A stretch of 64,000 bases of DNA, from IMG/VR virus record IMGVR_UViG_3300030419_008158, positions 124,001-188,000 of that record. One strand, 5' to 3'. A program made the position numbers and the translations under genes. Under the pieces are notes generated by a model that did not search any database, had not been told where the DNA came from, and saw only the letters and a list, made by a program, of their open reading frames with translations. Shown one piece after another: positions 27,684 to 51,316 of this stretch (positions within the stretch are counted from its first letter, which is position 1; every line of letters starts with the position of its first letter).

Positions 27684-27697
27684 TTAGCCCTCCCAGA

Positions 27698-30955: not shown

Positions 30956-30970
30956 TTTATCTCTCCAATG

Positions 30971-36900: not shown

Positions 36901-38041
36901 GTATAACTACAGTCCCATCAGCTTGTATTTTTACATCATTATCTTGAAAATCAATTCTTGTGTTAGAATCAGATAAGTGAGAAACATACTGTGAAACTAT
37001 TAGTTCACCTCGAACTGTGAGGTCATCGCCAACGTCTAGATCATCTGTAATGGTGAGATCATCAGTATAAAGTGCGCCGGAAACTACGACGTCACCCCCG
37101 AAGACCGCAGTCCCTTTTGTGGAGGATCCCTTGGAGCCTTGCGATCCAGAAACATAGAATGCAACATCAGATTGAGCGGCTTCGTTAAAAGATGTAGCTC
37201 CGCCACCAGACAGGACTAAGACTTGATCAAATTTATATGGATTGCCTGAACCTAGCCCGTAGCTCCCTAGCCATACTTTTTGATTCGGACCATCGGCAGA
37301 AAGAGCTGTAAGTGACTCTGCGTCTAAGAAAAATTGACCATCTGCAGGAAATGCTATTTGTGTAGTCAGATCTCCGATGTGTCTGACGCTTCTAGCAATA
37401 TCGATTGAAGCCGCCCCTGCCCCGTAAACCTCCAAGACACCGCTTGTTACAACATCACCACCAAAAACTGATGTTCCTCTAGTTGATGTTCCTTTAGAGC
37501 CTACAGCCCCAGAAACATAGAATGCAACATCATTTTGGGAACCTTCATCAAAAGATGTAGCTCCGCCGCCCGATAGAATTAAAACCTGGTCTTTGCTAGC
37601 ATCAACAAAAAGTGCATGTGTTTTATTTTCTGACTCGACCCTAAGATCATTTTCTGGATCTCCCTCGCCCGATTCATTGACAATTAGTCCTTCATGAATC
37701 GTGGCACTCTGAGAAACAATAAGTGATCCGGATACAGAAAGAGATCCTGTGGCGCTAAGATCAACCTCGACGACCTGTCTTTCCGCATACATTGTACCAG
37801 AAATGACTACGTCTCCACCAAAAAGCGTGACATCTGTTCGTGTGTTTTTACTTCCTGTCACAAACATAAAAACGTCTGTGCCGACATTTGCGAGAAGTGC
37901 AGAGTTGCTTAGAGCTTCTCCCTCATAGCCAGAAGAATCAGATGCACTAACAACCAGAATGCTGGGCTTTCCAGATTCAGATCCGGATCCGATTATTTGT
38001 GTAAGCCTGACCTGACTAGCTCTAAAATCTTTAGTTGCCAT
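30971..38041 (-). CDS. Giant tail-fibre-like protein (2356 aa)
   Basis: About 17 copies of D..F.VSG..G.K.....G..(V/L)FGGD..(V/S)SG; YTAGDGLDLSG fibre motif; C-terminal NIYTGDLHLRNDRGDWTIVEE domain. Confidence 0.8.
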   Translation of the reverse strand: MATKDFRASQVRLTQIIGSGSESGKPSILVVSASDSSGYEGEALSNSALLANVGTDVFMFVTGSKNTRTDVTLFGGDVVISGTMYAERQVVEVDLSATGSLSVSGSLIVSQSATIHEGLIVNESGEGDPENDLRVESENKTHALFVDASKDQVLILSGGGATSFDEGSQNDVAFYVSGAVGSKGTSTRGTSVFGGDVVTSGVLEVYGAGAASIDIARSVRHIGDLTTQIAFPADGQFFLDAESLTALSADGPNQKVWLGSYGLGSGNPYKFDQVLVLSGGGATSFNEAAQSDVAFYVSGSQGSKGSSTKGTAVFGGDVVVSGALYTDDLTITDDLDVGDDLTVRGELIVSQYVSHLSDSNTRIDFQDNDVKIQADGTVVIQLDGDSGQKSININNNANDVDFIVYADALGKQLIKGIAQSGNEQVLILSGGSGHSADQSSGEDVAFFVSGSAGAKHTDSHVTSLFGGDTVISGTLYALGSNSGVAAAAIGETAGATGLGLDAHVWVSGSMGSRNTSTRGTSIFGGDVMVSGAMVVGTPPTDSADGSLQDFVVNSKDSAGIIKVSGQHNYIQFQTSDSSGELSPGGDTFFHVSGTSGGKDSTGVAVFGGDVVISGSIWGTQESGSKTVLDFTADQLRFQNRNGRSASTGDDTNFYISGSRGSKNSATDRGTAVFGGDVVVSGTLYDGNGNPIGSGGGGGSSTTGSFNVPSPGEFVTTASLSVAGGLGFSHTADASGADAFFFVSGSVGQKGEATGKTAVFGGDTVVSGALYAETALHVTAITSSLADDTNMHFGDNSGTGYILFNVDGSEKVRITNGNGIEVQNTVSRIGDSNTKIHFSDDKISIEAGGKAGLVLSESEGDHSDIIYLGGPSSQYNRWDQVLILSGGGINSPNESEYMDVNFFVSGAVGGKGGDDHNVSLFGGDVVVSGAMYLEEISAPGTIPDGAVVLYGKDDSGVTKLYFKNESGEVEVGSGGGGGTVTTGSFNVPGQGEFVTTASLSLAGGEGFTHTANHEGSDLYFFVSGSKGKKDVIDSAAVSAFGGDVVISGTLYGGVSSVIEGTHLAHRADVNIIQGGSIPSSMGADISTFISGAIDWKGTSNARGTTVVGGDLLSSGTLFIDNSAQSTSDYRGIKFINDNDDSNAYFHINLRSKDTLPAVGGANSVNIQNRGAGSIMIGLGTGSLAKSPASFLVTEMAMPTYGSGFGGANRNFLMTSASHGGQVYILSGGAPTSVDPKHFTDTSFFVSGTIGSKDGSGGGVAVFGGDVVISGTLHGGSPLKIDGGLEVTGTMELKPPSGDDAIVRNPHGPVKVFASSSLKLGSSIGQIDFLDLDDGAAGAMWLTGSGGVANRSISLNTPGTLFMTGATGGTHFKGQIRADDGISGSLTQLTDGTPYLIAGDNITISTGSSGAVTINAAAGSGGGSGDPSATYIVLSATGSLNNERVLTAGSGISLSDAGAGGALTIASTGGTVTSGSFNVPSPAEFVTTASLSVAGGKGMTYTADSVGSDAFFFVSGTIGSKDSSTAGTAVFGGDLLSSGTIHLDDVLSISKSGDKSVILKALQTGGAGGGSLEIQEDSGNAVITVSEGSDNSGQLIVNGDFANVDFVVNSSGGSGANAIKVDASTDQVLILSGGGATSYNEATGDDVNFYVSGTVGSRGTSTRGAAVFGGDVVISGTLHGQDIHVSEYIYHSGDTDSNTFIQFAEDSIGITAGGEQLITVSEAGQDIVKIGDGGDVDFQVRTDGDDNTLYVQGSSDRVGIGTNSPSSLLHLKESAPTLSLQRESNSNDSTVAFIGSEGSTGAIMHISSSNDLVFKTHNGSAPEEMFRIGSHWGSLNRQIIFLSGSGLHEGAMQPKNAADIAFFVSGAIGSRGTSTKGTAVFGGDLYSSGSVYASTVHASTVTSAAVSGSLTKLSDGTSYLIAGSNVTITTGSSGAVTITSADTNTEYTAGDGLDLSGTTFSTDLKSGGGLKIDSTELAVDNTVIATLTGSTFSGAVTAPALSGSLTHLSDGTSYLIAGSNVTITTGSSGAVTIASSGGGVADAVGWSGPANQVIATSGSLTIGTTSATPGDADIFFASNGAAVFNEQGASVDFRVESNLKENALLVDGSSDQVLILSGGGATSYNEAAGADVNFYVSGTADNAGSANRGTSVFGGDLYVSGGFYLATNSDPLALSVDHTTDRVSWFGGGSPNSRMLINNRYGSALDISSSGVVVNEIGAATDFRVESRLKANALLVDGSTDQVLILSGGAASSTNEAVGSDVAFYVSGSTSSASTSTRGTSLFGGDVVASGTILPGADLGSNLGAPSRRFGNIYTGDLHLRNDRGDWTIVEEADYLCVVNNLTGKKFKMALIPLDENE

Positions 38042-38742: not shown

Positions 38743-40044
38743 CTAGAGCAAATGAGATGCCTCTGATGCTATTGTTGATCTTATTCCAACGGGCAAGTTT
38801 ACGTGGCTTGTGTGGAGAGAGTCTCTTAGTTTTTTTGTAACCAGCGAAAGTCCGTTTGTATTTTTGTTGATGTATGGAGTGTCAATTTGATCTGTGTCAC
38901 CCATAAGAATAATTTTTGAACCTTCTCCAACTCTTGTGATAACTGTCTTGAGCTCATGAATTGTAGCATTCTGAGCTTCGTCCAAGATAATGTAGGAATT
39001 AGTAAAAGTTCTGCCCCGAATAAAACTCATGGGGGCAATTTCTATCAACCCATTGACTCTCATGAGATCCCAAGCTGATTTGTCTTTAAAATGATTTCGA
39101 AGATTGTCAATAACTGGCGCCATCCATGGAGTCATCTTTTCTGTCATGTCACCGGGTAAATAGCCTATCTCTCTTCCCACAGGTTGTAGATTTCTGGTTA
39201 TTACAATTCTTTCATATCGATTCTGCTGAACTTCTGAAATTCCCGCAATTAAACTTAAAAATGTCTTTCCGGAGCCCGCTAAGCCTGTCATAGTAAAAAG
39301 CGGGATTTTAGGATTTTGCAGAGCCCACATGGCAAATTTTTGTTCTTTATTTTTTGCCATGACAGGCAAAGGAGATCCACCCAACCTAATGTCATTATCA
39401 GGAACAAGAATCATTTTTCTTTCAAAAGCATCATAAACACAAAGTGCAGACTGCCCCGAAGGACTTTTCATGACGACAAAAGAATTAGGACTAAGATCGC
39501 TGTCGTAGGGAATTTGTTTTTCTTTGTACAGGGCATCTATCATTCCGTCTTCTGGTTGAACTTCAACAATACCAGACCAGTTGTCTTCAGGAAGATCGAT
39601 GTAGTCAGTATAATAATCTTCTGATGATAATCCTACTGCATCGCACTTCACCCTAAGATTGATATCTTTAGAAACAACTACGATTGATTTCTGTGGGCTC
39701 TCTGATTTCATCTGAAGGCCTTCTAGTAAAATCTTATTGTCACTATCATTGGGATTCAAAGGAAAGCTCTGTGGTATCTCTGGATGTACGAGACGAATCG
39801 ACAGCGTGCTATCGTCTCCCATAGGTACACCCTTATGAAGTGGGCCTGCAGACCTAAGATCATCTAACAATCGATTTGCGTATCTTGCGTTTTCTCCTAA
39901 TGATCCTTGCTTTTCCTTGAATCGATCCAGCTCATCTAGGACAACTAGAGGAATAACAACATCACATCCGGAAAAATTTTCGATAGCATTTTTATCGTAT
40001 AAGATCGCGCTAGTATCTAGAATTACAGTTTTTCTTTTTGACAT
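38743..40044 (-). CDS. phoH: PIN-domain PhoH-like ATPase (PhoH2/YlaK type)
   Basis: VILDTSAILYD, ELDRFK, VSKDINLRVK; GLAGSGKT Walker A, RGRTF, ILDEAQN, GDTDQID. Confidence 0.92.
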   Translation of the reverse strand: MSKRKTVILDTSAILYDKNAIENFSGCDVVIPLVVLDELDRFKEKQGSLGENARYANRLLDDLRSAGPLHKGVPMGDDSTLSIRLVHPEIPQSFPLNPNDSDNKILLEGLQMKSESPQKSIVVVSKDINLRVKCDAVGLSSEDYYTDYIDLPEDNWSGIVEVQPEDGMIDALYKEKQIPYDSDLSPNSFVVMKSPSGQSALCVYDAFERKMILVPDNDIRLGGSPLPVMAKNKEQKFAMWALQNPKIPLFTMTGLAGSGKTFLSLIAGISEVQQNRYERIVITRNLQPVGREIGYLPGDMTEKMTPWMAPVIDNLRNHFKDKSAWDLMRVNGLIEIAPMSFIRGRTFTNSYIILDEAQNATIHELKTVITRVGEGSKIILMGDTDQIDTPYINKNTNGLSLVTKKLRDSLHTSHVNLPVGIRSTIASEASHLL

Positions 40045-41506: not shown

Positions 41507-42655
41507 TCATTCGTATGTGACAATTGACCCAATGTTTTGTAAAATATTTTCGATACTCTCAGAGCATCTAACAGCTGCTTTATACGTTGAAATAGGCACA
41601 TAAAAATTGAAATTATTATACTTTAATTTCATAACTCCCGACCTAGATGTAAAACGAGCCAGTGCCAAAAGAGTCTTGACTCTATCAATTGTAACTCCTT
41701 TGAGATAACTTAGGTCGGCTCCAAACTCTACGCTGATCTTTCTATCTTTTGCAGAAGATGCACTTTTAATAAGAATGCTCGACATTTCCATGGAAATTTC
41801 TATTTCGTCTGCTAGTCTTAGATTTGTTAGTTCACTGCCGATATCAGCACTAGCACATACAACACCAGCATTTTCAAAAAATAAAAAATTGGAAATACAC
41901 CATTCGTCAACAACAAATGGAATGCACATAAGTTTGTCGGGGTAATTAGTTGCTAACGTGTTGATCACATCCGGAAGAAATCCCTTCGCAGCAATTACAA
42001 CTGTTTGTCCTTTAGAATGATCTAAAATATTATGAATCTGTGACACTTTTTCTACGAATCCATCGACAGCAAATACAAATGCTTTTCCTGAAAAAGAAAA
42101 GTCACTTTCAAGTTTAGAAGAAAACCCCGGGGCAATATTGCCTTTCTGTGTAATACCTTCAATACATTTTATTTTAGTGCCGAATGAGTTTGCTTCCAAA
42201 AGATTGACTTCACACCCGCAGCCGCCCATATAAAATACTTCTTTTGCTATTTTACTGGATAGTCCGGAACCGCCCCAAGAGCTCACAACATTAATTACAT
42301 CATTTTCGTAGACTTTTCTTTCTTCTGTAATTTTTTCAACTTCACCAACAAGCATCATGCAGGAAAGCAACGCAGAACCTCCCTGCTTAGCTTCTGATGA
42401 AAAGAAAGAACTAAGCATGATGTTTCGTATGGATTTATCTAGAGAGTTGTTTCTAGACCACTCTGATAATATCCTAGGAAATTCTAAGGGCGTGCATGTA
42501 GACACTCTATCACCCAGCATTATGGTTCCGTTTCCAGAAATGCATTGGGATAAAAAATCTGACAGTTCTTTCTTTGCTTTTTTTATGGATGAGCTAACAT
42601 CACGTGAAAAATGAATAGATGAACTAGTGTATTTCTTTTGAGAAGGCTGATACAT
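41507..42655 (-). CDS. Degenerate, shortened GroEL/Cpn60-like protein
   Basis: Collinear similarity by eye to GroEL equatorial, intermediate and apical segments (see findings); the GDGTTT ATP motif is replaced by GGSALL. Confidence 0.65.
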   Translation of the reverse strand: [382 protein letters not shown]

Positions 42656-42881
42656 CGAAGTGATTGGGTGCCTCGACTAACTTATTTATGAAAGTACATG
42701 CAGAATCATAAAGTGCTTCTTTTTTGGACATTCTATTCAATTCAACCGCGTATCTAACGATGCCGCTTATAGTGCCTAGAGAAAGCAAAACTATGGAAAG
42801 TGTAACACTTTGAGAAAAAGAAAGTGCTCCACATGCAATTAGAGTTTCTGAAACAAACCCTTTCATTAGCTGTCTCTCCAT
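42624..42881 (-). CDS. Small membrane protein
   Basis: Two hydrophobic stretches in the N-terminal half. Confidence 0.55.
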   Translation of the reverse strand: MERQLMKGFVSETLIACGALSFSQSVTLSIVLLSLGTISGIVRYAVELNRMSKKEALYDSACTFINKLVEAPNHFDVSAFSKEIH

Positions 42882-44797
42882 AAGTTGTTGCTGGCATACG
42901 TAAGAATTTCTTCTGCAGAATCTTCGTTGTATCCATATTGTTCTATCATAACTTTCACCATTTCGTTATATTTCTTCTGTTGATCTTTGTCTCTAGTTTT
43001 GGACTTGGTAACAATTCTAGAAATATCTCGTACAGAGTTAATCAAGTATGACTCAATCGCTTCCTTGAGCGGTTCGTAAGATCTAAAGTCTACTTTTTCT
43101 CCTCTTCTCATTTTGGCGAACATATAAGCAGTGACATCCGACCTAAAGCCATCCCTAGAAGATCCTGTAACTCCAATTTGCTCTTCTATTGAAGCCATAA
43201 ATCGATCATCAGGCTTTCGAGTCTCTTTTGTGACTCTATCTTTCATCTTTTGTTTTGTTGTGTAGGCTTCTGCGTTGTCAAGATAGGTGTCAAAGAGTGA
43301 CTGTGCCTGTTCTTCGTAGGCGGAAATAAATGCTTTTGCAATTTCTGAATCCAGCATTTTCAAATACTCTTCCCGAAGAACTTTTCCAATAAGCTCGAGA
43401 CATTTTTGCTTGAATTCTTCGTCGGAAATTTGTTCTTTAACAGAATTTGTCAAGGATTCCATTAGTGATACCGGCGTAATCATATTTTTATCACTTTTGG
43501 CCAGTGCACCGTCCAAAGCCTTGGTTATAAATCTAGTCGATATGCCGCTCATCCCTTCTCTTCGAGCTTCTTCCTTTAGATCTTTGATGTCAATTTTTTT
43601 AACTCTGCCTTTTTCTACAACTTCTTCTCCATTGTAGATCTTCATTTTAGTGACTAGATCACACTTAGCAGACTGTTTAAGTCTAGACATGATGCTAAAC
43701 ATTGAAGCAATTCGCAGCGTGTGGGGCGCAATGTGTGCATCAAAATCTGATTGGCCTAGCATTTTTTCGTAAATTTTAATTTCTTGATCTAGTTCTAGGC
43801 AATAAGGTACATCTACTTTTACAACTCTGTCTAAAATTGCTTCGTTTGTGTGTTCACTTTGGAACCTATTCCACTCTGCTTCATTGCAATGAGCTAAAAT
43901 TACACCATCGAAGTGAAGCATATCACTTTTTCCGGGCGAAGGAATTCTTTTTTCTTGAGTCGCTGTAATAATTGTATGAAGAAATTCTATTTCATTTTTG
44001 AAAACTTCTACTAGCTCAACAATACCCCTGTTACCGACATTGAATGCACCGTTTAGAGAAAGAGCACGAGGGTCATCTTCTGCATATTTGTCAAGTTTTG
44101 ATATATCAACTGATCCTATCAAAACAGAAGTATCTTGACTGTTGGCATCCATGGGAGGGACAGAGGCTACGCCACGACGACCGCGCTGGGAAAATGTCGT
44201 CTCTTCAACCTCAAAATCCTCATATTTTCCATCCAACTGCTGAAGAAGGAGGTGGCGTGCAATAGGACTAATATCGCCATGGATTCTCACCCCTAGCTCT
44301 TTTTCAAACGTATCTCTTAGTGCTCTTGGAACCAGCTGTAATGGCTCTCCTCGATGAGGATCACCTTTCAAGTGGTAATATTTGTGTCCTTCTAGTGCAC
44401 TTTTTATATGCTCAGTAAGCGCAGATTTACCAGCCCCGACAGGCCCCATAAGAAGTAAAACTTGTCTACTTTCTTCTCCGTTGTGAGCCGAGCTGTGCAT
44501 AAAGCTCATGAGTTTTTCTAGCACTAATTCCATGCCAAAAAAATGCTCTTCAAAGTACTTGTAAACTTTGACTGAATTATTGTCAAAGATTCTACTTTTT
44601 CGCGGGTTGCTATCTGGCATTTTTTCAACACCGTACTCAATAATAGCATCGTAAAGTCGTCTATGTGCAGACTTTACAACACTAGGATCTTTGGCAACTT
44701 TTTCCAAGTAATCGCTAAAAGTACCTTCAAACTTTTTCTTTTTGGAACCTTCTTCTCTCTGTTCCTTTATTGCATCTAATAGTGTGTTTACAGACAT
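42866..44797 (-). CDS. prkA: PrkA/YeaG-family AAA+ protein
   Basis: FFGM, GPVGAGKS Walker A, NVGNRGIVELVEVFKN, AHCNEAEW, AILDR, APHTL. Start moved to 44797 (GGAG SD). Confidence 0.93.
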   Translation of the reverse strand: MSVNTLLDAIKEQREEGSKKKKFEGTFSDYLEKVAKDPSVVKSAHRRLYDAIIEYGVEKMPDSNPRKSRIFDNNSVKVYKYFEEHFFGMELVLEKLMSFMHSSAHNGEESRQVLLLMGPVGAGKSALTEHIKSALEGHKYYHLKGDPHRGEPLQLVPRALRDTFEKELGVRIHGDISPIARHLLLQQLDGKYEDFEVEETTFSQRGRRGVASVPPMDANSQDTSVLIGSVDISKLDKYAEDDPRALSLNGAFNVGNRGIVELVEVFKNEIEFLHTIITATQEKRIPSPGKSDMLHFDGVILAHCNEAEWNRFQSEHTNEAILDRVVKVDVPYCLELDQEIKIYEKMLGQSDFDAHIAPHTLRIASMFSIMSRLKQSAKCDLVTKMKIYNGEEVVEKGRVKKIDIKDLKEEARREGMSGISTRFITKALDGALAKSDKNMITPVSLMESLTNSVKEQISDEEFKQKCLELIGKVLREEYLKMLDSEIAKAFISAYEEQAQSLFDTYLDNAEAYTTKQKMKDRVTKETRKPDDRFMASIEEQIGVTGSSRDGFRSDVTAYMFAKMRRGEKVDFRSYEPLKEAIESYLINSVRDISRIVTKSKTRDKDQQKKYNEMVKVMIEQYGYNEDSAEEILTYASNNLWRDS

Positions 44798-44850
44798 ATT
44801 ACAAATCTCCAGCGCCATGGCATCTTATAAAACATAGGAAGACGATAAAA

Positions 44851-46152
44851 TCAAATCTCCCATGGCTCTCCCTCTATTATAGTATTTAAGACTACATTTT
44901 TACCCCATAAACATTTTGAATGTTCGACAGTATGATCTGCGTAGTCTAAATCAAGATCTCTTCCGTCGTGCTCATGCCGAAGCATAAGCGTACCATCCAT
45001 ATCGATATCATCTACTTTAATGACAGGAAGACGAGAATCAGCAATAGAGTCACACATGTGTGCTTTAACTTTTTTCCACCCATCATCATCTGAAATTTCA
45101 TCAATTGTAAATGCGTCTTTTTTTTCACTCCAGCTAAACAGATTTAGCTCATTGCAAAGCTCTTCGGTCAAATACTGTCTAACAAAACTAATGTCATTTC
45201 CTGACTCTCTTGCGACAAAGCATTCTTCTAGGCCGTGCTTTTCTTTGATGTCTTGAAAAATTACAAACCCCAAATGATACGGATTTAACCTTCCAATATG
45301 AGGCCTAATAACAGCATTGTGCATTCGCAAAAATGGAATATGATACTTGTCTGGTAAATTCAAATCGTGACATATTGTATAGTGCCAAAAAGAAGCCCAC
45401 CCCTCGTTCATTATTTTAGTTTGTATTTGTGGCATAAAATAATAAGCTTCATCTCTAACAATCTCTATTACATCACGTTTCCAGTCGGGCATTCTTGCAT
45501 GTTCTGAAATAAATCCCATAATATCACAGTCCGGCTCAAGAGGTGGACTGTCTAAGTCTAATAGAATTAAATTCCCTTCTTTGTCATGCTCTCTTAGCCC
45601 TTTATAATATTCGACCAATTCTTTGTGTGTTTTTCGCTCCGATCCGTCTCTATAGATCTGATACTGGAGAGCGTGACATGCATCAATTATTTCTTCGACT
45701 TTTTCTATTCCAATATAGGGATCTTCGACGTACTCTTGAATTCTTTTTTTAGCCTGTCTAAATCTACCGATCACAGAATCTGCTCTTGTATTTTTAAACA
45801 TTCGATTGTTTTTGAAAAAATCAGAGTGTCCGACACAATGAGCCATGATAAGAATTTGCAAGTAAAGAGGGTTTTCTCGCATAAGATATGCGATAGAAGG
45901 GTTGGAATTGATAATAAGCTCGTATGGAAGGCCTTCGGCACCCAAGTTATACATTTGATGTGTTCTTTCAAAAGACTTTCCGTAAGACCAATGATCGTAA
46001 TGTGTGGGCATGCCGTGATAAGACATATGACCAATCATTGAGTAATAGTCACAAACTTCATAGCTTATTGGGTACCAATCCAGCCCATACCCATTTGCGA
46101 TTTCAATAATTTTGTCATCCCATTCTTTCAAATCATCTACAGACCAGCTCAT
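44851..46152 (-). CDS. spoVR: SpoVR/YcgB-family protein
   Basis: GMPTHYDHWSYGK, YELIINSNP, AHCVGHSDFFKNN, TKIMNEGWASFWH, NPYHLG, LRHEHDGRDL. Confidence 0.93.
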   Translation of the reverse strand: MSWSVDDLKEWDDKIIEIANGYGLDWYPISYEVCDYYSMIGHMSYHGMPTHYDHWSYGKSFERTHQMYNLGAEGLPYELIINSNPSIAYLMRENPLYLQILIMAHCVGHSDFFKNNRMFKNTRADSVIGRFRQAKKRIQEYVEDPYIGIEKVEEIIDACHALQYQIYRDGSERKTHKELVEYYKGLREHDKEGNLILLDLDSPPLEPDCDIMGFISEHARMPDWKRDVIEIVRDEAYYFMPQIQTKIMNEGWASFWHYTICHDLNLPDKYHIPFLRMHNAVIRPHIGRLNPYHLGFVIFQDIKEKHGLEECFVARESGNDISFVRQYLTEELCNELNLFSWSEKKDAFTIDEISDDDGWKKVKAHMCDSIADSRLPVIKVDDIDMDGTLMLRHEHDGRDLDLDYADHTVEHSKCLWGKNVVLNTIIEGEPWEI

Positions 46153-47321
46153 TTTTCTTCTCCGTAGTTTCCAAACATTATCTTAAATGACTTCCATACA
46201 TCTTCTTTTTCTTTAATAGAGGTACATTTCATTGACCTTCCGACCAATTGTTTTAGGTGATTTGAAATTTTTTGTTCCTGAAACCATTCGGGTTCTGCTC
46301 CCGGTGTTATTTCACAGTAACCAAATAGTTGACAAATATCTCTAAGTTTCGTTGCAGCAGACAACATATCTTCCGTATCATGACCAAAGTTGTCCCCATC
46401 TGATGCATGGAACGCGTAGACATTCCAAGCAGACGGATGGTATCTTTGATTAATCACATCAAGTGCTTCATTGTAAGCAGTAGAGACTATAGTTCCTCCG
46501 GAGGATCCTCTTGTAAAAAATTGTTCTTCACTTACTTCTCGTGCTTCCATGTCGTGTGAAATAAAGACTATTTCTGTTTGATCGTATTTTGATCGAATAA
46601 ACTGATATAAAAGAAAAAAGAAGCTTCTTGCAAGAAATTTTTTCGGTTTGCCCATAGAGCCTGAAACATCCATCATCATCACAATGACAGCATTTGTATT
46701 TTCTTTCATTTTGGGCTTATAGTGTCGATATGTCAGATCATCGTTGTGAAAACTACCTTCTAGCTCTTCTATTTCTTCTCCGCCCTCTCTTTGTTTTGCC
46801 TTGAGTCTTTTTATTCGATTGATAGCTGATTTTTTCTTGTCTAGGCGTGGAATAATTCCTTGAGGTCTATAGCCAGTTCTTTTTAGTTTTTCTGATTTGC
46901 TTTGAGTAAAAGCTTTGCGCTCCATGTCAGGAAGCTCTAATTCATCAAAAAGATATTTTGCTAATTCGTCGAGTGATATTTCAACCTCGTAAAACTCATC
47001 GCCTCTTTTGTCACCGGCTTTTTGGGGCTTACCGTCTTTTGATTTATTTTTTTCTCTTATAATCTGGTCTCTTGCAAGATCTTTTCCAGGTGCTGATCCT
47101 ACATTTTTATTAGCCTCGCCACTACCGTAGACAAAACGATATTCCTTTATCCCTCTAACGGGTATTCGAAACTTCTTTTTTCCGTCTTGACCAATAATAG
47201 ATTCATCGGCAACAATATCATGAATTCCTTCACGAATTGCCTTTTCGATCTTGTGTTTGTGTCGTCGACGATCAGAAGCAGATCGATCTGCTGTAGTCTT
47301 ATGGTGAGAAAATCCTGACAT
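46149..47321 (-). CDS. yeaH: YeaH/YhbH (DUF444, vWA-like) protein
   Basis: DRRRH...IRE, IPVRGIKEYRF, MMDVSGSM, FISHD, GGTIVS, WNVYAFHASDGDN. Confidence 0.9.
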   Translation of the reverse strand: MSGFSHHKTTADRSASDRRRHKHKIEKAIREGIHDIVADESIIGQDGKKKFRIPVRGIKEYRFVYGSGEANKNVGSAPGKDLARDQIIREKNKSKDGKPQKAGDKRGDEFYEVEISLDELAKYLFDELELPDMERKAFTQSKSEKLKRTGYRPQGIIPRLDKKKSAINRIKRLKAKQREGGEEIEELEGSFHNDDLTYRHYKPKMKENTNAVIVMMMDVSGSMGKPKKFLARSFFFLLYQFIRSKYDQTEIVFISHDMEAREVSEEQFFTRGSSGGTIVSTAYNEALDVINQRYHPSAWNVYAFHASDGDNFGHDTEDMLSAATKLRDICQLFGYCEITPGAEPEWFQEQKISNHLKQLVGRSMKCTSIKEKEDVWKSFKIMFGNYGEEK

Positions 47322-47337
47322 TATCTTCCTGTGATTA

Positions 47338-47345
47338 TAACTATC
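47338..47345 (-). promoter_or_regulatory. GATANTTA putative promoter motif
   Basis: GATAGTTA 16 nt upstream of the yeaH ATG at 47321. Confidence 0.4.
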
Positions 47346-47397: not shown

Positions 47398-49005
47398 TTA
47401 GCCAAATTCTGGTCCAAACATTTTTTTATTTTTTTGAAAAAATCTTTCCCACGAAGAATCAAGTATGTAAGTAACAGCTGTATCCGTTTCACTTCTAACG
47501 GATCTTCCTATGCTTTGTATGACAGTTTTTGCTGTTTGTAAGTCGTACCACCAGTCCCACTTATTCATTTTTTTTCTTACTAGTCTGTCACCCAAATATG
47601 GAAATGGAACCTTGCAGATAATCTGAAATCTGGACAAGTCTTCCTTAAGATCAACACCTTCTGTCATAGATGGCGAAAGAAGCACAGTGGGCTCTTTTGA
47701 TCGAATATGTTTTTGAAGTATTTCGTCTCTATTGGTTGAATCATGAATAAGCAGTCTAGAACTTCTAATGTTCTTCTTTAAGTGCCAAGCGATTTTATAA
47801 GAATGGCAGTGAATAATTCCTTTTTCATTTTTATGACCTTTGAGTATTTCTTTGACAGCAGCTGTAAGCTTTGGAAGCGTTGAATTTATTTCATTGGCAG
47901 ACATTTTTCCAATACCGCTGTAGATGATTGGTCGATTCTCAGTAGGAAATGGGCACGGAATAGAAAGGGTCTTATAATTTTTTCCCTCTGATATTCCTGA
48001 GATTTTTGCAAATTTTTCCATATCGACAATTGTTGCTGACATCATTAGAACATGCTGTCCCATCTTAAGCATGTAATCATATGCATACGGTGCGACATCG
48101 ATGGGTTTGAATTCTACCTTTCTACTAGATTTTTCTTGGGCCGGTATTTCTGTCATGACCCAGTTATCTTTGTCGTAAAGGGCTATAAAAGTAAGAACTT
48201 TTTGTTCATGACTCGTTAGAATTTCAATCTGCCTTGATAGTTTAGAAAATTCTCCGCTTTTCATGCGAGACTTAATTGATGTGTATTTCTCTAAACCTCT
48301 ATTGAATTCTTTGACTTTCTTTGCAAGTGCTGGATGATATTCGTTTTTTACCCATCTGACAAACATTCCAGGCGTTATCTTTTCCGGAAGGGTTATGCCT
48401 ACAAACGACTTTGCAAATCTATCAGAAAAAGTTACTTCAATAAACTTGCTAAGCTCTTCTGGTGCATTGTGTGCTTCATCAATCACAAGAAGCGTCTTTT
48501 TAGGAATTTTGCCGCTATAGCGAGTCTCAGTCAAAAAGTAAGAAAAGTTTGTAACACCGTGAGGATCTTCGATAAACTTGTCTTTTGCCTGTTTGTAGGT
48601 GCACTTAAAAGCACATCTTTTGAAAAATGGATCGCTGCGATCAGTTGTTTTTAGCATCTTCCTTGATTCATTACAGTTTTGGTGCTTGTGATACGTGCAC
48701 TGATAGTTTGAAGATGACTTGAGAGAATTAATGTCGGGATAATCCCGTTTATATTGTTCTTGTAGTAATTTTTGTGTAGTAAGGATGTTGCTTCCGCGAA
48801 CAAATTCATCGACCGCCGGAATATGATGAGCAACATAGCGTGCTACAGTTGATGCAATTGCAGACTTCCCTACACCGGTACCCGCATCGAGTACAAAATA
48901 TTTTTTTCCTGACTCGAAAGCATCAATAATTTCATCGATTGCTTTCTTTTGTCCGGGTCGTACTTCTGGGTACGGAAAGTATCCTTTCCAATCAAATTTA
49001 GGCAT
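47398..49005 (-). CDS. DinG/YoaA (XPD-like) SF2 helicase
   Basis: RPGQ Q-motif, AGTGVGKS, DEAH, MSAT, EGVD, QSIGRSVR; Cys residues compatible with an Fe-S site. Confidence 0.88.
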   Translation of the reverse strand: MPKFDWKGYFPYPEVRPGQKKAIDEIIDAFESGKKYFVLDAGTGVGKSAIASTVARYVAHHIPAVDEFVRGSNILTTQKLLQEQYKRDYPDINSLKSSSNYQCTYHKHQNCNESRKMLKTTDRSDPFFKRCAFKCTYKQAKDKFIEDPHGVTNFSYFLTETRYSGKIPKKTLLVIDEAHNAPEELSKFIEVTFSDRFAKSFVGITLPEKITPGMFVRWVKNEYHPALAKKVKEFNRGLEKYTSIKSRMKSGEFSKLSRQIEILTSHEQKVLTFIALYDKDNWVMTEIPAQEKSSRKVEFKPIDVAPYAYDYMLKMGQHVLMMSATIVDMEKFAKISGISEGKNYKTLSIPCPFPTENRPIIYSGIGKMSANEINSTLPKLTAAVKEILKGHKNEKGIIHCHSYKIAWHLKKNIRSSRLLIHDSTNRDEILQKHIRSKEPTVLLSPSMTEGVDLKEDLSRFQIICKVPFPYLGDRLVRKKMNKWDWWYDLQTAKTVIQSIGRSVRSETDTAVTYILDSSWERFFQKNKKMFGPEFG

Positions 49006-49442
49006 TATAGTTCTAGTTCCATCATTTTCTGCACCATAGACTTAGAAATGTTAATCTTAAGCTCTGTGGTAGAGAAATTATGATTTCTTTCAATAAAATA
49101 GACAGGTTTTTCGTAGTGTGCTCCAGTGTAATCTTCTCTGTCGCGATAGTCACTACCTAAAATTCTGACGTCGTAATTTTCCTGTCCCAGGACTTTGTCT
49201 AATTCTTTCTCTGTGTTATATGTGACAATCTTATCAACATAGCGAATTGACTCCAATATTTCAATTCTATCACTCAGGGATTGTACTGGCTTGCATTTTT
49301 CAGGCCTGTCGATAGTGGGATCCCCTTGAAGAGCAACAGTAACATTTTCACAAACGCTTTTTGCCTCTTTAAACATTCTAATATAGCCTGGATGAATTAC
49401 ATCAAACGAGCCACAAATAATTCCGCATGTATAAATTTTCAT
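49005..49442 (-). CDS. Cytidylyltransferase (TagD-like)
   Basis: GSFDVIHPGY, YVDKIV, LGSDY, FSTT. Start moved to 49442 (ATGA overlap). Confidence 0.85.
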   Translation of the reverse strand: MKIYTCGIICGSFDVIHPGYIRMFKEAKSVCENVTVALQGDPTIDRPEKCKPVQSLSDRIEILESIRYVDKIVTYNTEKELDKVLGQENYDVRILGSDYRDREDYTGAHYEKPVYFIERNHNFSTTELKINISKSMVQKMMELEL

Positions 49443-50059
49443 ATTATTGCATCCACCAGCCCTAGCTCCAAACATCTTTCAGAGGGTAACCAAAGCTCAT
49501 GCTTCAATAGCTCTTCAAGAGATTCTTCGTCAATCTTTGATGTTTCAAGATAAATTTTCTTTATTGTATCAAATATAACTTTTTGATTTTCTATTTCGTC
49601 AATAAACTCGTCATGCTTACCAGCCCATAAAATTTGAGGCTGATGGATTAGCATAAATGATCTTTTGCTAATATAACGTTTTTTACCTCTTGAAGATATC
49701 AATGTTGCCGCAGATGCAGCTGAGCCCTCAACGTATGTGTAAACATCAGTCTTGCATCTATCAATTGCATCACAAATATTTAGTCCAGAAAATACATCTC
49801 CGCCCGGACTTTGTATATGCAAATGAATGGGTGGATTCTTTCTAAGACCAATTCTTGCTGCTAAATAAGACATTTCTATGTCTAGACGTCTTATGATTCG
49901 AACTAATTCGAATGCTTCTTTATCTGTTACAGCTGCATAAAAATATATGTGGTTCTCTTCAACATCAATGCCGCTAGGTTTTCCTTTTTCTTCTGACATT
50001 AGCAAGGACGCAATGTTCTCACTCATCTCATCAGAAATCACTGCTTGATCTTCGTTCAT
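49439..50059 (-). CDS. clpP: ClpP-like serine protease
   Basis: IQSPGGDV, GSAASAAT (catalytic Ser), MLIHQP (His), ELWL...CLELGLVD. Start moved to 50059 (ATGA overlap). Confidence 0.85.
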   Translation of the reverse strand: MNEDQAVISDEMSENIASLLMSEEKGKPSGIDVEENHIYFYAAVTDKEAFELVRIIRRLDIEMSYLAARIGLRKNPPIHLHIQSPGGDVFSGLNICDAIDRCKTDVYTYVEGSAASAATLISSRGKKRYISKRSFMLIHQPQILWAGKHDEFIDEIENQKVIFDTIKKIYLETSKIDEESLEELLKHELWLPSERCLELGLVDAII

Positions 50060-50502
50060 TCGGTAGAATCGTCGTCTATTTTCAGAAGAGGATAATCTCC
50101 GAATGACGTTTTTACTATTGCGCATTTTACTCCTTCAAAAGCGTTATTAGGTAGACTTTTTGCATTAATAATCAAAATTTCAAATTTAGCTGTAGTTGAA
50201 ATGTGATTTCTGTCATTATCTAGATTTGAAATTTTTGGAATACAAGTCGCCCGATAATAGTTCATCATTCCATCTTTCCAGATATTTGATGTTTCGTCTA
50301 CTTTTTCTCCTTGAAAGACTTTCCACACAGATGGATTTCTGTCAGAATAGTCACCGCAGCATAAAAAAAACCTTAGGTCATCGTAGAGATCATCTGGGAC
50401 ATCTGGAACATCGCCTACAGGTGTCATATATTGATACTCTTTTTCAACGACTAAAAGATCCAGCGGAGAAAATAAGTTTCGTATTTTTTCTAATTCGTTC
50501 AT
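50056..50502 (-). CDS. Hypothetical protein
   Basis: Overlaps clpP by 4 nt; no recognised motif. Confidence 0.6.
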   Translation of the reverse strand: MNELEKIRNLFSPLDLLVVEKEYQYMTPVGDVPDVPDDLYDDLRFFLCCGDYSDRNPSVWKVFQGEKVDETSNIWKDGMMNYYRATCIPKISNLDNDRNHISTTAKFEILIINAKSLPNNAFEGVKCAIVKTSFGDYPLLKIDDDSTE

Positions 50503-50527
50503 CAGTTTATACTTAAAAATCGGGGTT

Positions 50528-51316
50528 ATGAAAAAAAACTATATCAGTCTAATTCTATTACTAATGTGTCTTTTTTTCACACAATGTGGTGTACATGGAA
50601 AATACACAGGTCCCACTCCAGCAATTTACAAGCTTGTTGAAACCCAGACAGTACTTGTTGAAGTCACAAATACGATTACACCAACGCGGTGTGAAAATAA
50701 ATCTAATTTTGCAAAGAAAGAAGACCTTTGCTCAAAAGTTTTGCCCGAACTTCCACCCATACACGGATCACATGTGGGAACAGGAACATTTATCAAGTTG
50801 AACGATGAAATAGTTGTTTTGACTGCAGAGCATGTATGTGCCCCAGACGAAGTTCCGAAAAAAGTAGAAAAAGATGACGTAGTCGTTTATCCGACAATTG
50901 AAACAAAAATTGAAATTAAGTCGAGAATTTATACGGGTGTTGGCTCTGTGTTAAAAATGAGCAAACCTCTGGACATATGTGTTTTGTCGCTAGACGTCCA
51001 GCCTAATGTTTCTGTTCCTAACTTTTCAAGAAAACCACCCGAAAGAGGTGCTAGAATATACTACGCCGGAGCGCCGCAGGGGTTCATGTCGGATACTGCC
51101 CTAATGATGTTTGATGGAAGATATGCGGGAACCATGGGGAAAATGCTAGCATTTTCAATGCCCTGTGAGCACGGAACCTCAGGTGCCAGTGTTAGAAATA
51201 GTAAAAATCAAATATTTTCGATAGTGCAAAGAGTGAACGGTCAGTTCAAGCATATGTGTTACGGTGTTAGCACAGAAGAGATGATAAAATTCTTAAGTAC
51301 TATAAAGCCTAAGTAA
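50528..51316 (+). CDS. Secreted/lipoprotein trypsin-like serine protease
   Basis: Signal-like N-terminus ending FFTQC; LTAEHVC (His), DICVL (Asp), HGTSGA (Ser). Confidence 0.82.
   Translation: MKKNYISLILLLMCLFFTQCGVHGKYTGPTPAIYKLVETQTVLVEVTNTITPTRCENKSNFAKKEDLCSKVLPELPPIHGSHVGTGTFIKLNDEIVVLTAEHVCAPDEVPKKVEKDDVVVYPTIETKIEIKSRIYTGVGSVLKMSKPLDICVLSLDVQPNVSVPNFSRKPPERGARIYYAGAPQGFMSDTALMMFDGRYAGTMGKMLAFSMPCEHGTSGASVRNSKNQIFSIVQRVNGQFKHMCYGVSTEEMIKFLSTIKPK

What the first reader, a model, noticed from the sequence alone, without database searches (positions are those of the whole stretch)
42866..47345. Complete YeaH-SpoVR-PrkA trio in a phage, in permuted order
Seen: yeaH, spoVR (4-nt overlap) and prkA transcribed in that order with intact motifs, behind a GATAGTTA motif. 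Established: these three families co-occur in bacteria and archaea, usually with prkA first, and are linked to stationary phase, nitrogen starvation (E. coli YeaG) and sporulation (Bacillus). AAA+/vWA pairs commonly remodel proteins. Inference: the phage controls host dormancy or stress physiology, or reuses the AAA+/vWA machine for its own assembly.
Basis: partly seen in the sequence, partly recalled or inferred. Interest (0 to 1): 0.6.

Follow-up and report, generated by a model that had tools for sequence, protein, structure and literature searches.

The report
Phage-borne PrkA–YeaH–SpoVR stress module
A 284-kb T4-like marine phage carries an intact copy of the bacterial three-gene PrkA/YeaH/SpoVR starvation module, and hundreds of related phages keep it in the same reshuffled order, so it is a long-held phage tool and not a stray host gene; similar trios already sit, undiscussed, in published phage genomes.

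Summary
yeaH (46149-47321), spoVR (44851-46152, ATGA overlap) and prkA (42866-44797/44818) lie on the minus strand with intact Walker A, MIDAS and SpoVR motifs. The record is a 284-kb IMG/VR virus with a T4-type capsid, tail sheath, tail tube and endolysin genes.

The trio is not unique. At least 195 IMG/VR contigs hold PrkA at 65-92% identity, and 78 of 80 fetched keep yeaH-spoVR-prkA. The genes are intact, dN/dS is 0.04-0.07, and the clade is monophyletic (SH-aLRT 99). The nearest non-clade relatives share 43-54% identity in PrkA (35-47% in YeaH and SpoVR) and have the canonical order, so the block was captured once, long ago, then permuted.

Cultured Thermus phages share the permuted order. 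RsoM2USA and megaphages have the canonical one. Some high-GC bacteria are permuted too.

It also precedes tail sheath, tail tube and endolysin genes, so it is probably a late promoter.

New leads: the SpoVR model has a zincin-peptidase-like fold, and YeaH-SpoVR binding is supported (ipSAE 0.84, best control 0.01).

The likeliest role, which is inferred, is late ATP-driven turnover of host proteins. Expression was not tested.

The parts
47338..47345 (-). Its core ATAGTTA (47338-47344) is one copy of a degenerate ATA[CG]TTA element and is probably a late-promoter-like signal. It overlaps a TATAAT hexamer.
   Evidence: Sequence read. There are 20 copies on the coding strand of the genome. Eleven lie outside ORFs of 100 aa or more, which cover all but 12% of the genome (binomial p 5e-6), and 10 lie 8-60 nt before a gene start. 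Genes behind other copies are tail sheath, tail tube and two endolysin-like genes. The element is present at -12 to -25 before yeaH in 19 of 68 distinct relatives, against a 1% background, 0 of 65 before spoVR and 3 of 65 before prkA.
47325..47330 (-). Ribosome-binding site AGGAAG of yeaH
   Evidence: Read directly from the sequence. It ends 3 nt before the ATG at 47321.
46149..47321 (-). yeaH / yhbH homologue (DUF444): a conserved N-terminal region plus a C-terminal vWA domain with an intact MIDAS
   Evidence: PF04285 E 1.9e-106. The best NCBIfam model is TIGR02877 spore_yhbH at 397 bits, below its 468 cut-off. phrog_19072 E 2.6e-85. MIDAS D217/S219/S221, T276 and D307 are invariant against E. 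coli and phage homologues. Median dN/dS is 0.04.
44851..46152 (-). spoVR / ycgB homologue; the predicted fold resembles a zincin metallopeptidase catalytic domain, followed by a SpoVR_C domain
   Evidence: PF04293 E 7e-123 and PF24755. The AF2 model has pLDDT 83 and pTM 0.82. The VIA-align wide search returned almost only zincin peptidases in its top 50, Z up to 11.7. Invariant His/Glu/Asp residues are listed. Median dN/dS is 0.048. One relative (L009) carries a LAGLIDADG intein in this gene.
42866..44818 (-). prkA / yeaG homologue: an N-terminal AAA+ ATPase and a PrkA C-terminal domain. The likely true start is 44797.
   Evidence: PF08298 E 1.8e-138 and PF06798 E 4e-79. NF011999 scores 411 bits, below its 576 cut-off. 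The solved relative 9xip matches at E 6e-92. Walker A and other invariant residues are shown. The start is judged. Median dN/dS is 0.072.
42624..42866 (-). Small 80-aa ORF with a hydrophobic N-terminal half. Its ATG overlaps the prkA stop (TAATG). It is a possible fourth, poorly conserved member of the unit.
   Evidence: Sequence read. It has no Pfam match. tblastn found it in only 2 of 80 related loci, so whether it belongs to the unit is uncertain.

Best explanation
SHOWN. The region is an intact phage copy of the bacterial PrkA (YeaG/SpdA)-YeaH-SpoVR (YcgB) module. It is a fixed feature of a large clade of T4-like aquatic jumbo phages, always in the order yeaH, spoVR, prkA. All three genes rank the same relatives in the same order. 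The nearest relatives outside the clade have the canonical prkA-first order. So the block was taken once from a bacterium, long ago, then permuted and kept under strong purifying selection.

INFERRED. The three genes form one transcription unit that starts at an ATA[CG]TTA element. The same element precedes tail and lysis genes, so the unit is probably made late in infection.

Mechanism (inference). PrkA is the AAA+ motor. YeaH is a vWA adaptor whose conserved N-terminus clamps onto SpoVR. SpoVR has a zincin-peptidase-like fold with a non-canonical metal motif. Together they would act like a split ATP-dependent remodelling or degrading machine. In E. coli, YeaG is needed for bulk starvation proteolysis. 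By analogy the phage would use the module to turn host cytoplasmic proteins into amino acids and energy while virions are being built in nutrient-poor hosts.

My confidence is about 0.9 in the descriptive and evolutionary part and about 0.3-0.35 in the proteolysis-for-virion-production part.
For: Family assignments and motifs.

Viral status.

Clade size and synteny: 195 IMG/VR contigs at 65-92% PrkA identity. Of 80 fetched, 78 are yeaH-spoVR-prkA and the other 2 are cut at a contig end. A word search found 7225 metagenomic proteins, and the top 120 are at least 77% identical, Tara Oceans among the sources.

Not decaying: 81 of 82, 81 of 83 and 84 of 86 copies are full length. Synonymous sites are saturated in most pairs. 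In the unsaturated pairs median dN/dS is 0.04, 0.048 and 0.072, against 0.21 for the neighbouring helicase.

Not recent: among 1.84 billion representatives the best non-clade hits share 54, 49 and 48% identity, then 40% or less. Their contigs carry prkA-DUF444-spoVR. All three genes give the same ranking of relatives. In the tree the viral clade has support 99, with Epulonipiscium (94) and L098 (90) next to it.

Promoter-like element.

Mechanism leads: the SpoVR fold matches are almost all zincin peptidases. For the YeaH-SpoVR complex the ipSAE is 0.84 and the best of 3 controls is 0.01. That mark was reached by 58 of 80 solved complexes and 2 of 110 mismatched pairs. The runs agree in at least 85% of contacts and the partner's pLDDT is at least 87. 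The predicted interface includes invariant YeaH D16/R19/H20/E59/F62 and SpoVR H53/W54/K58/E152/D156.

Literature: yeaG, yeaH and ycgB are cofit in six bacteria (bioRxiv 10.1101/072470). YeaG is required for starvation-induced bulk proteolysis (PMC13684143). PrkA alone shows weak or no protease activity and looks like a clade III AAA+ protein similar to Yme1 (PMC9512850 and PMC13001217). A ClpP-like gene and a trypsin-like peptidase gene lie just upstream.
Against: There is no expression or functional data, and no RNA run was listed.

The promoter reading rests on motif position and on which genes follow it, not on mapped transcript starts.

SpoVR lacks the catalytic Glu of HExxH, and the His-His spacing differs between lineages: Hx3H here, Hx4H in E. 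coli. It may therefore not be a peptidase. Foldseek found no significant match, and the VIA Z scores of 8-12 fall in the range the tool warns can be common for helical models.

The complex prediction is a model's own confidence, made with my own alignments. PrkA contacts could not be tested because of the size cap.

The biochemical activity of PrkA is disputed in the literature: kinase, protease or neither.

The host is unknown, so whether it has its own trio is unknown. Late expression fits an assembly role equally well.
Confidence: 0.45

Rival explanations
1. Regulatory takeover. The phage trio acts as a signalling or regulatory unit, with PrkA as a kinase or regulatory AAA+ protein. It would push the host into, or hold it out of, a stationary-phase, nitrogen-starvation or sporulation-like state.
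For: YeaG and PrkA are linked to nitrogen starvation, the RpoS regulon and sporulation, and have been described as kinases. The neighbouring PhoH2 is another starvation-associated gene type common in phages.
Against: The late-promoter-like element is shared with tail and lysis genes. That argues against an early takeover role. The kinase activity of PrkA was not reproduced in B. subtilis or B. anthracis. Carrying all three genes suggests a self-contained machine more than a single regulator.
Confidence: 0.2
2. Phage's own assembly or maturation machine. The AAA+/vWA pair with a zincin-like partner would remodel, process or load a virion component. This would resemble MoxR-vWA chaperones or the Mg-chelatase I/D/H arrangement.
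For: Expression is predicted to be late, together with structural genes. AAA+/vWA pairs commonly mature large complexes (established knowledge). The trio was kept independently in at least three phage lineages, most of them large myoviruses.
Against: The closest cultured capsid relatives (Flavobacterium phage immuto, Microcystis phage Mel-JY01, Rhodothermus phage RM378) are not among the PrkA hits. T4-type assembly therefore does not need the trio. In bacteria the same module works without any virion. ORF28-30 were not among the proteins identified from the abundant virion bands of RsoM2USA; this is weak evidence.
Confidence: 0.2
3. Counter-defence or competition. The machine would degrade or disable specific host defence proteins, or proteins of competing phages.
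For: There is no direct evidence here. It is plausible because AAA+/vWA and peptidase modules occur in conflict systems (general knowledge), and large phages carry many anti-defence genes.
Against: The strong conservation (PrkA 65-92% identity, dN/dS about 0.05) is unlike fast-evolving arms-race genes. The bacterial module has housekeeping-like starvation phenotypes.
Confidence: 0.08
4. Artefact or passenger. The contig would be cellular or chimeric, or the genes a recent host capture that is drifting.
For: Six GTDB MAG contigs of assorted phyla carry near-identical loci.
Against: The four MAG contigs long enough to judge (L088-L091) hold the trio in the phage order, and three add phage-type neighbours such as the helicase. 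One of these MAGs also holds the T4-type capsid gene. The assigned taxa are mutually inconsistent, as expected for mis-binned phage DNA. Intactness, dN/dS, the identity gap and monophyly all speak against recent capture. The GC content of the trio matches the surrounding genome.
Confidence: 0.02

Closest known systems
Bacterial PrkA/YeaG(SpdA)-YeaH/YhbH-SpoVR/YcgB module (E. coli, B. subtilis and many bacteria and archaea)
   Same: It has the same three Pfam families with the same invariant residues. The three genes lie together on one strand. The whole block behaves as one evolutionary unit.
   Different: It is encoded by a virus. The order is yeaH-spoVR-prkA, not prkA-yeaH-spoVR. About 33 of 44 PrkA-positive genomes in one phylum sample were canonical and 3 were permuted. 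Identity to E. coli proteins is only 29-35%. Scores fall below the NCBIfam equivalog cut-offs. It is preceded by a phage late-type motif, not an RpoS- or sigma-E-type control region.
Thermus phages phiYS40, TMA, MN1, phiLo and Lalka (cultured)
   Same: They are phage-encoded and share the order yeaH-like vWA gene, spoVR, prkA ('serine kinase') on one strand.
   Different: They represent an independent acquisition. PrkA identity is 29-32%, and the proteins sit on a separate branch beside Alicyclobacillus-type PrkA. TMA has an extra 616-aa gene between spoVR and prkA. Their YeaH homologues are shorter.
Ralstonia jumbo phage RsoM2USA, megaphage records LR745206, LR756502, LR756504 and LR756511, and about 45 IMG/VR contigs with E. 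coli-type YeaG
   Same: They are large phages that carry all three genes.
   Different: Their order is canonical prkA-yeaH-spoVR, except LR756502, where spoVR lies far from prkA-yeaH. RsoM2USA PrkA nests with proteobacterial YeaG (58% identity to E. coli), so this is yet another capture. The RsoM2USA paper lists ORF28 and ORF30 under different functional headings and does not treat them as one module.
FtsH/Yme1-type AAA+ zinc proteases, and AAA+/vWA systems (MoxR-vWA pairs; Mg-chelatase BchI/BchD/BchH)
   Same: This is a working analogy only: an AAA+ motor, a zincin-like domain and a MIDAS-bearing vWA adaptor. B. anthracis PrkA was placed in AAA+ clade III beside Yme1 (PMC13001217). The SpoVR model matches zincin catalytic domains.
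   Different: Here the parts are separate polypeptides. SpoVR lacks the HExxH glutamate. No proteolytic or chelatase activity has been shown for the assembled trio.
T4 late promoter (TATAAATA, read by gp55)
   Same: It is a short AT-rich element 15-45 nt before the start codons of tail, head-neighbour and lysis genes, with no -35 partner.
   Different: The sequence is ATA[CG]TTA, usually preceded by G. TATAAATA itself is not used here: 4 copies on the coding strand and none before a gene start. Transcript starts were not mapped and the sigma factor was not identified.

Membership tests
PrkA / YeaG family (AAA_PrkA + PrkA C-terminal domain) | Both Pfam domains above the gathering score, in the family's order | tested here: met
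   PF08298 scores 461.9 bits (cut-off 25) at residues 33-386. PF06798 scores 266.3 bits (cut-off 25) at residues 389-641.
PrkA / YeaG family (AAA_PrkA + PrkA C-terminal domain) | Intact nucleotide-binding residues (Walker A Lys; acidic Walker B-like residues; sensor Asn; Arg finger) | tested here: met
   GPVGAGKS 125-132, E268/E271, H310-x-N312 and R331 are invariant against E. coli YeaG, RsoM2USA and the Thermus phages, and within the clade.
PrkA / YeaG family (AAA_PrkA + PrkA C-terminal domain) | Equivalog-level match to the curated NCBIfam model | tested here: not met
   NF011999 scores 410.7 bits, below its cut-off of 576. The protein is a family member but not a curated equivalog.
YeaH / YhbH (DUF444, vWA) | Pfam DUF444 above cut-off, with an intact MIDAS (DxSxS...T...D) | tested here: met
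   PF04285 scores 357.1 bits. D217, S219, S221, T276 and D307 are invariant.
YeaH / YhbH (DUF444, vWA) | Equivalog of sporulation protein YhbH (TIGR02877) | tested here: not met
   It scores 396.7 bits, below the cut-off of 467.95.
SpoVR / YcgB | Pfam SpoVR plus SpoVR_C above cut-off, with the family's invariant residues kept | tested here: met
   PF04293 scores 410.8 bits and PF24755 scores 38.4 bits. The invariant residues are shown. NF008737 scores 283 bits, below its cut-off of 679.
PrkA-YeaH-SpoVR three-gene module | All three genes adjacent on one strand | tested here: met
   The span is 42866-47321 with gaps of 32-53 nt and one 4-nt overlap. The arrangement is conserved in 78 of 80 related loci.
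PrkA-YeaH-SpoVR three-gene module | Canonical order prkA, yeaH, spoVR | tested here: not met
   The order here is yeaH, spoVR, prkA. The nearest non-clade relatives are canonical.
PrkA-YeaH-SpoVR three-gene module | The three proteins act together (cofitness or physical complex) | tested here: inconclusive
   Only YeaH-SpoVR was modelled: ipSAE 0.84 against a best control of 0.01. PrkA pairs exceed the size cap. Cofitness is known for bacteria only.
Zincin (MA-clan-like) metallopeptidases, considered for SpoVR | Thermolysin-like catalytic fold: a beta-sheet followed by the active-site helix | tested here: inconclusive
   The AF2 model has pLDDT 83. VIA-align Z is 8-11.7 over 150-196 residues against M1, M3, M4, M32, M49, M61 and DUF885 chains. 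Foldseek found nothing at E below 0.001, and the tool warns that Z in this range can occur by common architecture.
Zincin (MA-clan-like) metallopeptidases, considered for SpoVR | HExxH motif with a catalytic Glu and a third metal ligand | tested here: not met
   The motif is H104-C-V-G-H108, with no Glu. E. coli has Hx4H spacing. A conserved NEGWA (E249) could be the third ligand, but this is untested. SpoVR is therefore not filed as a zincin peptidase.
Phage auxiliary (host-derived) gene module | Encoded inside a bona fide phage genome, of cellular origin, and maintained by selection | tested here: met
   Viral hallmark genes. Nearest non-clade relatives, one of them on a bacterial chromosome. 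Purifying selection.
Phage auxiliary (host-derived) gene module | Expressed during infection | not testable with these tools
   No RNA run was listed for this sequence.

The most novel reading that the evidence does not exclude
A globally abundant clade of marine T4-like jumbo phages encodes a self-contained, late-expressed, split AAA+ (PrkA) / vWA (YeaH) / zincin-like (SpoVR) proteolytic machine. It would be the viral counterpart of the bacterial SpdA starvation-proteolysis programme. The phage would use it to liquidate the host proteome into amino acids and ATP for virion synthesis in oligotrophic cells. If so, SpoVR would be the long-sought catalytic partner that explains why purified PrkA alone shows little or no protease activity.
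Probability: 0.25. Interest if true: 0.8.

Novelty: new member of a known kind. Interest (0 to 1): 0.5.

Why it matters
The PrkA/YeaH/SpoVR module is one of the most widespread bacterial stress modules whose biochemistry is still disputed. In October 2026 YeaG was reported to be needed for bulk protein degradation in starved E. coli (PMC13684143).

Phages have captured the whole three-gene block at least three times. One abundant marine clade has kept it intact through enough divergence to saturate synonymous sites. This argues that the trio is a portable, self-sufficient machine that is useful during infection.

The result gives concrete experiments. Does the phage trio complement yeaG, yeaH and ycgB mutants? 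Does it drive host protein turnover late in infection?

It also gives two structural leads for the family as a whole: a zincin-like SpoVR, and a YeaH N-terminus that clamps onto it.

For phage ecology it adds proteome recycling to the list of starvation-related functions, alongside PhoH, that large aquatic phages carry.

The presence of the trio in phages is not itself new. It is already in GenBank and PHROGs. I found no paper in the held library that treats it as a module.

Tried and rejected
- Nucleotide search of the 4.5-kb region against 50,697 phage records found no match.
- The exact 8-mer GATAGTTA as a recurrent motif was rejected: 2 observed against 2.06 expected and 5 in 284 kb. It was replaced by the degenerate core ATA[CG]TTA.
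- The sigma-70 promoter and terminator scan found nothing convincing next to the trio. The only strong terminator is at 40312-40289.
- PHROGs and Pfam on the large neighbouring ORFs gave mostly no hits. A Terminase_6C search of the genome found none.
- The first genome-contig scan used clade-specific patterns, so it could not reach distant cellular relatives. This was made good with the representative search and a 121-genome survey.
- RNA evidence: none was listed.
- Foldseek of the SpoVR model against the PDB gave no match at E below 0.001.
- Paper searches for 9XIP/9XIQ/9XIR and for phiYS40 with 'serine kinase' found nothing. One search was spoiled because 'yeag' matched author names, and one was malformed.
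- The first dN/dS script timed out and was rewritten.
- PrkA-YeaH and PrkA-SpoVR complexes were not modelled.
- The recent-capture, decay and cellular-contig readings were considered and rejected.
- The idea that the permuted order is unique to viruses was considered and rejected.
- No alternative genetic code was used. Nothing human-like or toxin-related came up.

Full report
WHAT IS THERE

The window is bases 124,001-188,000 of a 284,429-bp IMG/VR virus record with CheckV completeness 100. Almost every gene lies on the minus strand.

Three consecutive minus-strand ORFs sit at the reported place:
- a DUF444/YeaH homologue at 46149-47321 (390 aa);
- a SpoVR homologue at 44851-46152 (433 aa);
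- a PrkA homologue at 42866-44818 (650 aa).

All match their Pfam families far above the gathering scores. They fall below NCBIfam's equivalog cut-offs. They are therefore clear family members but not close copies of the curated E. coli or Bacillus proteins.

The yeaH stop and the spoVR start overlap as ATGA. The prkA start is more likely the second ATG at 44797. It has a GGAG 9 nt upstream, and both the homologues and the public gene call give 643 aa. A small hydrophobic 80-aa ORF is coupled to the prkA stop by TAATG.

The conserved residues are intact in alignments with E. coli YeaG, YeaH and YcgB and with phage homologues. They are the Walker A motif and the other AAA+ residues of PrkA, the MIDAS of YeaH, and the His/Glu/Asp set of SpoVR.

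IS IT A PHAGE?

Yes. The genome encodes a T4-type Gp23 major capsid protein. Its nearest cultured relatives are Flavobacterium phage immuto, Microcystis phage Mel-JY01 and Rhodothermus phage RM378.

It also encodes a tail sheath, a tail tube and two endolysin-like proteins, a 2356-aa protein with an endosialidase-type tailspike domain, and eight tRNAs and a tmRNA.

The GC content of the trio (0.37-0.39) matches the surrounding genome.

HOW COMMON IS THE TRIO, AND IS IT DECAYING?

A scan of IMG/VR found 195 viral contigs whose PrkA is 65-92% identical to this one. Many of these contigs are 200-360 kb long.

Of the 80 loci fetched, 78 carry yeaH, spoVR and prkA in that order on one strand. The other two are cut by a contig end. 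A DinG-like helicase often lies upstream. Two small ORFs and PhoH2 often lie downstream.

A word search of 5.8 billion proteins returned 7225 hits. The top 120 are all at least 77% identical, and Tara Oceans is among the sources.

The genes are full length in 81 of 82 (yeaH), 81 of 83 (spoVR) and 84 of 86 (prkA) loci. The partial copies lie at contig ends, except in L009, where an intein interrupts spoVR.

Synonymous sites are saturated in more than 94% of pairs. In the unsaturated pairs the median dN/dS is 0.04 for yeaH, 0.048 for spoVR and 0.072 for prkA, against 0.21 for the neighbouring helicase. This is strong, long-lasting purifying selection.

WHERE DID IT COME FROM?

An exhaustive HMMER search of 1.84 billion cluster representatives found 2185 relatives. 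The best share 54, 49 and 48% identity. The next full-length ones share 40% or less.

Those three nearest relatives lie on contigs with the canonical order prkA-DUF444-spoVR. One is the 3.3-Mb chromosome of Candidatus Epulonipiscium viviparus, and the other two look cellular.

YeaH and SpoVR rank the same relatives in the same order as PrkA does. The trio therefore moved as a block.

I built a 120-row tree (quick search, LG+G4, SH-aLRT support). In it the window, 11 IMG/VR loci and 4 MAG contigs form one clade with support 99. Epulonipiscium (94) and L098 (90) are the next branches.

RsoM2USA PrkA nests with E. coli-type YeaG. The Thermus phage proteins form a separate clade beside Alicyclobacillus-type PrkA. 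Phages have therefore captured the module at least three times.

The six GTDB hits at 64-81% identity are MAG contigs assigned to unrelated phyla. The four that are long enough hold the trio in the phage order, and three of these also carry phage-type neighbours such as the helicase. One of the MAGs also holds the T4-type capsid gene. They are best read as mis-binned phage DNA.

IS THE PERMUTED ORDER SPECIAL?

It is fixed in this clade but not unique to it.
- Cultured Thermus phages MN1, phiLo and TMA have the yeaH-like gene, then spoVR, then prkA. TMA has one extra gene before prkA.
- RsoM2USA and three megaphage records are canonical, and a fourth has spoVR far away.
It confirmed 102 loci. 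Of the 80 kept, 45 have E. coli-type YeaG, of which 38 show the full canonical order. Thirty-one window-type loci are permuted.
- I surveyed 121 genomes of Epulonipiscium's phylum. Forty-four have PrkA and 43 have SpoVR. About 33 have prkA upstream of spoVR on the same strand.
- Three high-GC genomes in that sample have yeaH-spoVR-prkA. Their PrkA is only 36% identical to the phage's and lies in a different part of the family.

The rearrangement has therefore arisen more than once, in cells and in viruses.

THE MOTIF

The exact GATAGTTA is not enriched. Its core is.

ATA[CG]TTA occurs 20 times on the coding strand of the genome. Eleven copies lie outside ORFs of 100 aa or more, although only 12% of the genome does (binomial p 5e-6). 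Ten lie 8-60 nt before a gene start.

The genes behind other copies include the tail sheath, the tail tube, the gene just upstream of the capsid gene, and two endolysin-like genes.

Among relatives, 19 of 68 distinct yeaH upstream regions carry the element at -12 to -25. The background is 1%. It occurs before spoVR in 0 of 65 loci and before prkA in 3 of 65.

I read this as the phage's late-promoter-like signal, playing the part of T4's TATAAATA. On that reading yeaH-spoVR-prkA is one unit made late. This is inference from position and company. No transcript starts were mapped, and no RNA run was listed.

HOW IT MAY WORK

The literature is unsettled.
- yeaG, yeaH and ycgB are tightly cofit in six bacteria.
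- PrkA was called a kinase, then an ATP-dependent protease (PMC9512850). A later study found neither activity and described a Yme1-like clade III AAA+ protein (PMC13001217).
- In E. coli, YeaG is needed for starvation-induced bulk degradation of cytoplasmic proteins, which supplies amino acids and ATP (PMC13684143).
- A PrkA structure is in the PDB (9xip and two related entries, E 6e-92). YeaH and SpoVR have no solved relative by sequence.

I modelled SpoVR (pLDDT 83, pTM 0.82). Foldseek found nothing significant. An all-against-representatives structural search returned almost only zincin metallopeptidase catalytic domains in its top 50: DUF885, M1, M3, M4, M32, M49, M61 and ACE. Z reached 11.7, with 150-196 residues aligned at 3.1-4.3 A rmsd.

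The His-x3-His of SpoVR sits on the helix that follows the beta-sheet, where zincins carry HExxH. A conserved NEGWA resembles, from memory, the M1 family's third-ligand motif. However, the catalytic Glu is missing, and E. coli has a different His spacing. I therefore do not file SpoVR as a peptidase.

A complex model of YeaH with SpoVR passed the tool's test. The median ipSAE is 0.84 and the best of 3 controls is 0.01. That mark was reached by 58 of 80 solved complexes and 2 of 110 mismatched pairs. The runs agree in at least 85% of contacts, and the partner's pLDDT is at least 87. My own alignments were used, so those counts hold only roughly.

The predicted interface joins the conserved YeaH N-terminus (residues 1-23 and 56-92) to SpoVR's conserved polar cluster and its C-terminal domain. 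The YeaH side includes D16, R19, H20, E59 and F62. The SpoVR cluster includes H53, W54, K58, E152 and D156. The vWA domain of YeaH is left free.

One relative carries a LAGLIDADG intein in SpoVR next to the invariant H277/N278 and NPY region. Inteins tend to sit at sites of this kind in important genes.

A ClpP-like gene and a trypsin-like peptidase gene lie just upstream of the helicase.

Taken together, the most economical model is an ATP-driven remodelling or degrading machine. PrkA is the motor, YeaH the adaptor, and SpoVR the zincin-like partner. The phage would make it late to recycle host proteins. I put this at roughly one in three.

Two rivals are each about one in five: a regulatory takeover of host starvation physiology, and a role in the phage's own assembly. 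A counter-defence role is less likely. The artefact or recent-capture reading is essentially excluded.

NOVELTY AND VERDICT

The trio in phages is already in public records and in PHROGs. Thermus phage annotations name 'SpoVR' and 'serine kinase'. In the held library the only paper that mentions the genes in a phage lists them under separate headings.

What this analysis adds:
- the size and age of the marine clade and its fixed gene order;
- the en bloc origin from relatives with the canonical order;
- at least three independent phage captures;
- the late-promoter-like element;
- two structural leads, a zincin-like SpoVR and a supported YeaH-SpoVR interface.

I classify it as a new member of a known kind, of moderate interest. 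The interest would rise sharply if the proteome-recycling model is confirmed.

LIMITS
- The host is unknown.
- Expression is untested.
- The tree is a quick search.
- The gene-order survey covers one phylum sample.
- PrkA contacts were not modelled.

Noticed in passing
window 1-26016: A long run of about 25 tightly packed minus-strand genes looks like a glycan / nucleotide-sugar pathway. It includes several GT1/GT2/GT4 glycosyltransferases, GDP-mannose 4,6-dehydratase, an NAD-dependent epimerase, a carbamoyltransferase, a radical SAM protein, an RpiB-cytidylyltransferase fusion and a MobA-like NTP transferase. This is unusually large for a phage.
   Followed up: partly
window 26238-38041: A GC-rich island (0.42-0.47, against about 0.37 elsewhere) holds ORFs of 481, 1085 and 2356 aa. 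The 2356-aa protein ends in an endosialidase-type tailspike domain. These are probably fibre or host-recognition genes.
   Followed up: partly
window 38743-40044: A PhoH2-type protein (PIN domain plus PhoH ATPase) lies downstream of the trio. It is syntenic with the trio in many related phages.
   Followed up: partly
window 49005-51316: A ClpP-like serine protease (49439-50125), a cytidylyltransferase-like gene (49005-49475) and, on the opposite strand, a Trypsin_2 peptidase (50528-51316) lie just upstream of the helicase and the trio. This is a local concentration of proteolysis genes.
   Followed up: partly
window 56406-58499: A 697-aa protein carries four copies of the MopE-type putative metal-binding motif (PF11617).
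   Followed up: no
G000:C1:231895-248474 (outside the window): The phage encodes a tmRNA (tag peptide ANDNVEYDYALAA) and eight tRNAs. From memory, the ANDN... start of the tag resembles proteobacterial tags and may hint at the host. This was not tested.
   Followed up: no
L009:3255-5816: In one related viral contig SpoVR is an 853-aa ORF. An intein with a LAGLIDADG homing endonuclease is inserted after about residue 280, next to invariant SpoVR residues.
   Followed up: yes
L088-L093 (GTDB MAG contigs): Contigs of this phage lineage are binned into MAGs labelled Bdellovibrionota, Legionellales, Halobacteriovorax, Luteolibacter, Proteobacteria and Anaerolineaceae. The Halobacteriovorax MAG also holds the T4-type capsid gene. 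This is likely binning contamination in public genomes.
   Followed up: partly
G043:C15, G007:C10, G087 (phylum sample): In several bacterial genomes the PrkA AAA domain matches in two pieces, separated by 4-18 kb or lying on different contigs. This suggests insertions or split genes within prkA.
   Followed up: no
proteins P0127-P0163: Many relatives of 950-1570 aa match only residues of about 220-650 of PrkA at their C-terminal end. These are fusion forms with a large extra N-terminal region.
   Followed up: no
G000:C1:1-50 and 284009-284058: The first 50 bases of the record recur 421 bases before its end, but the similarity does not extend further. This may be a trace of circular permutation or of the assembly join.
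   Followed up: no
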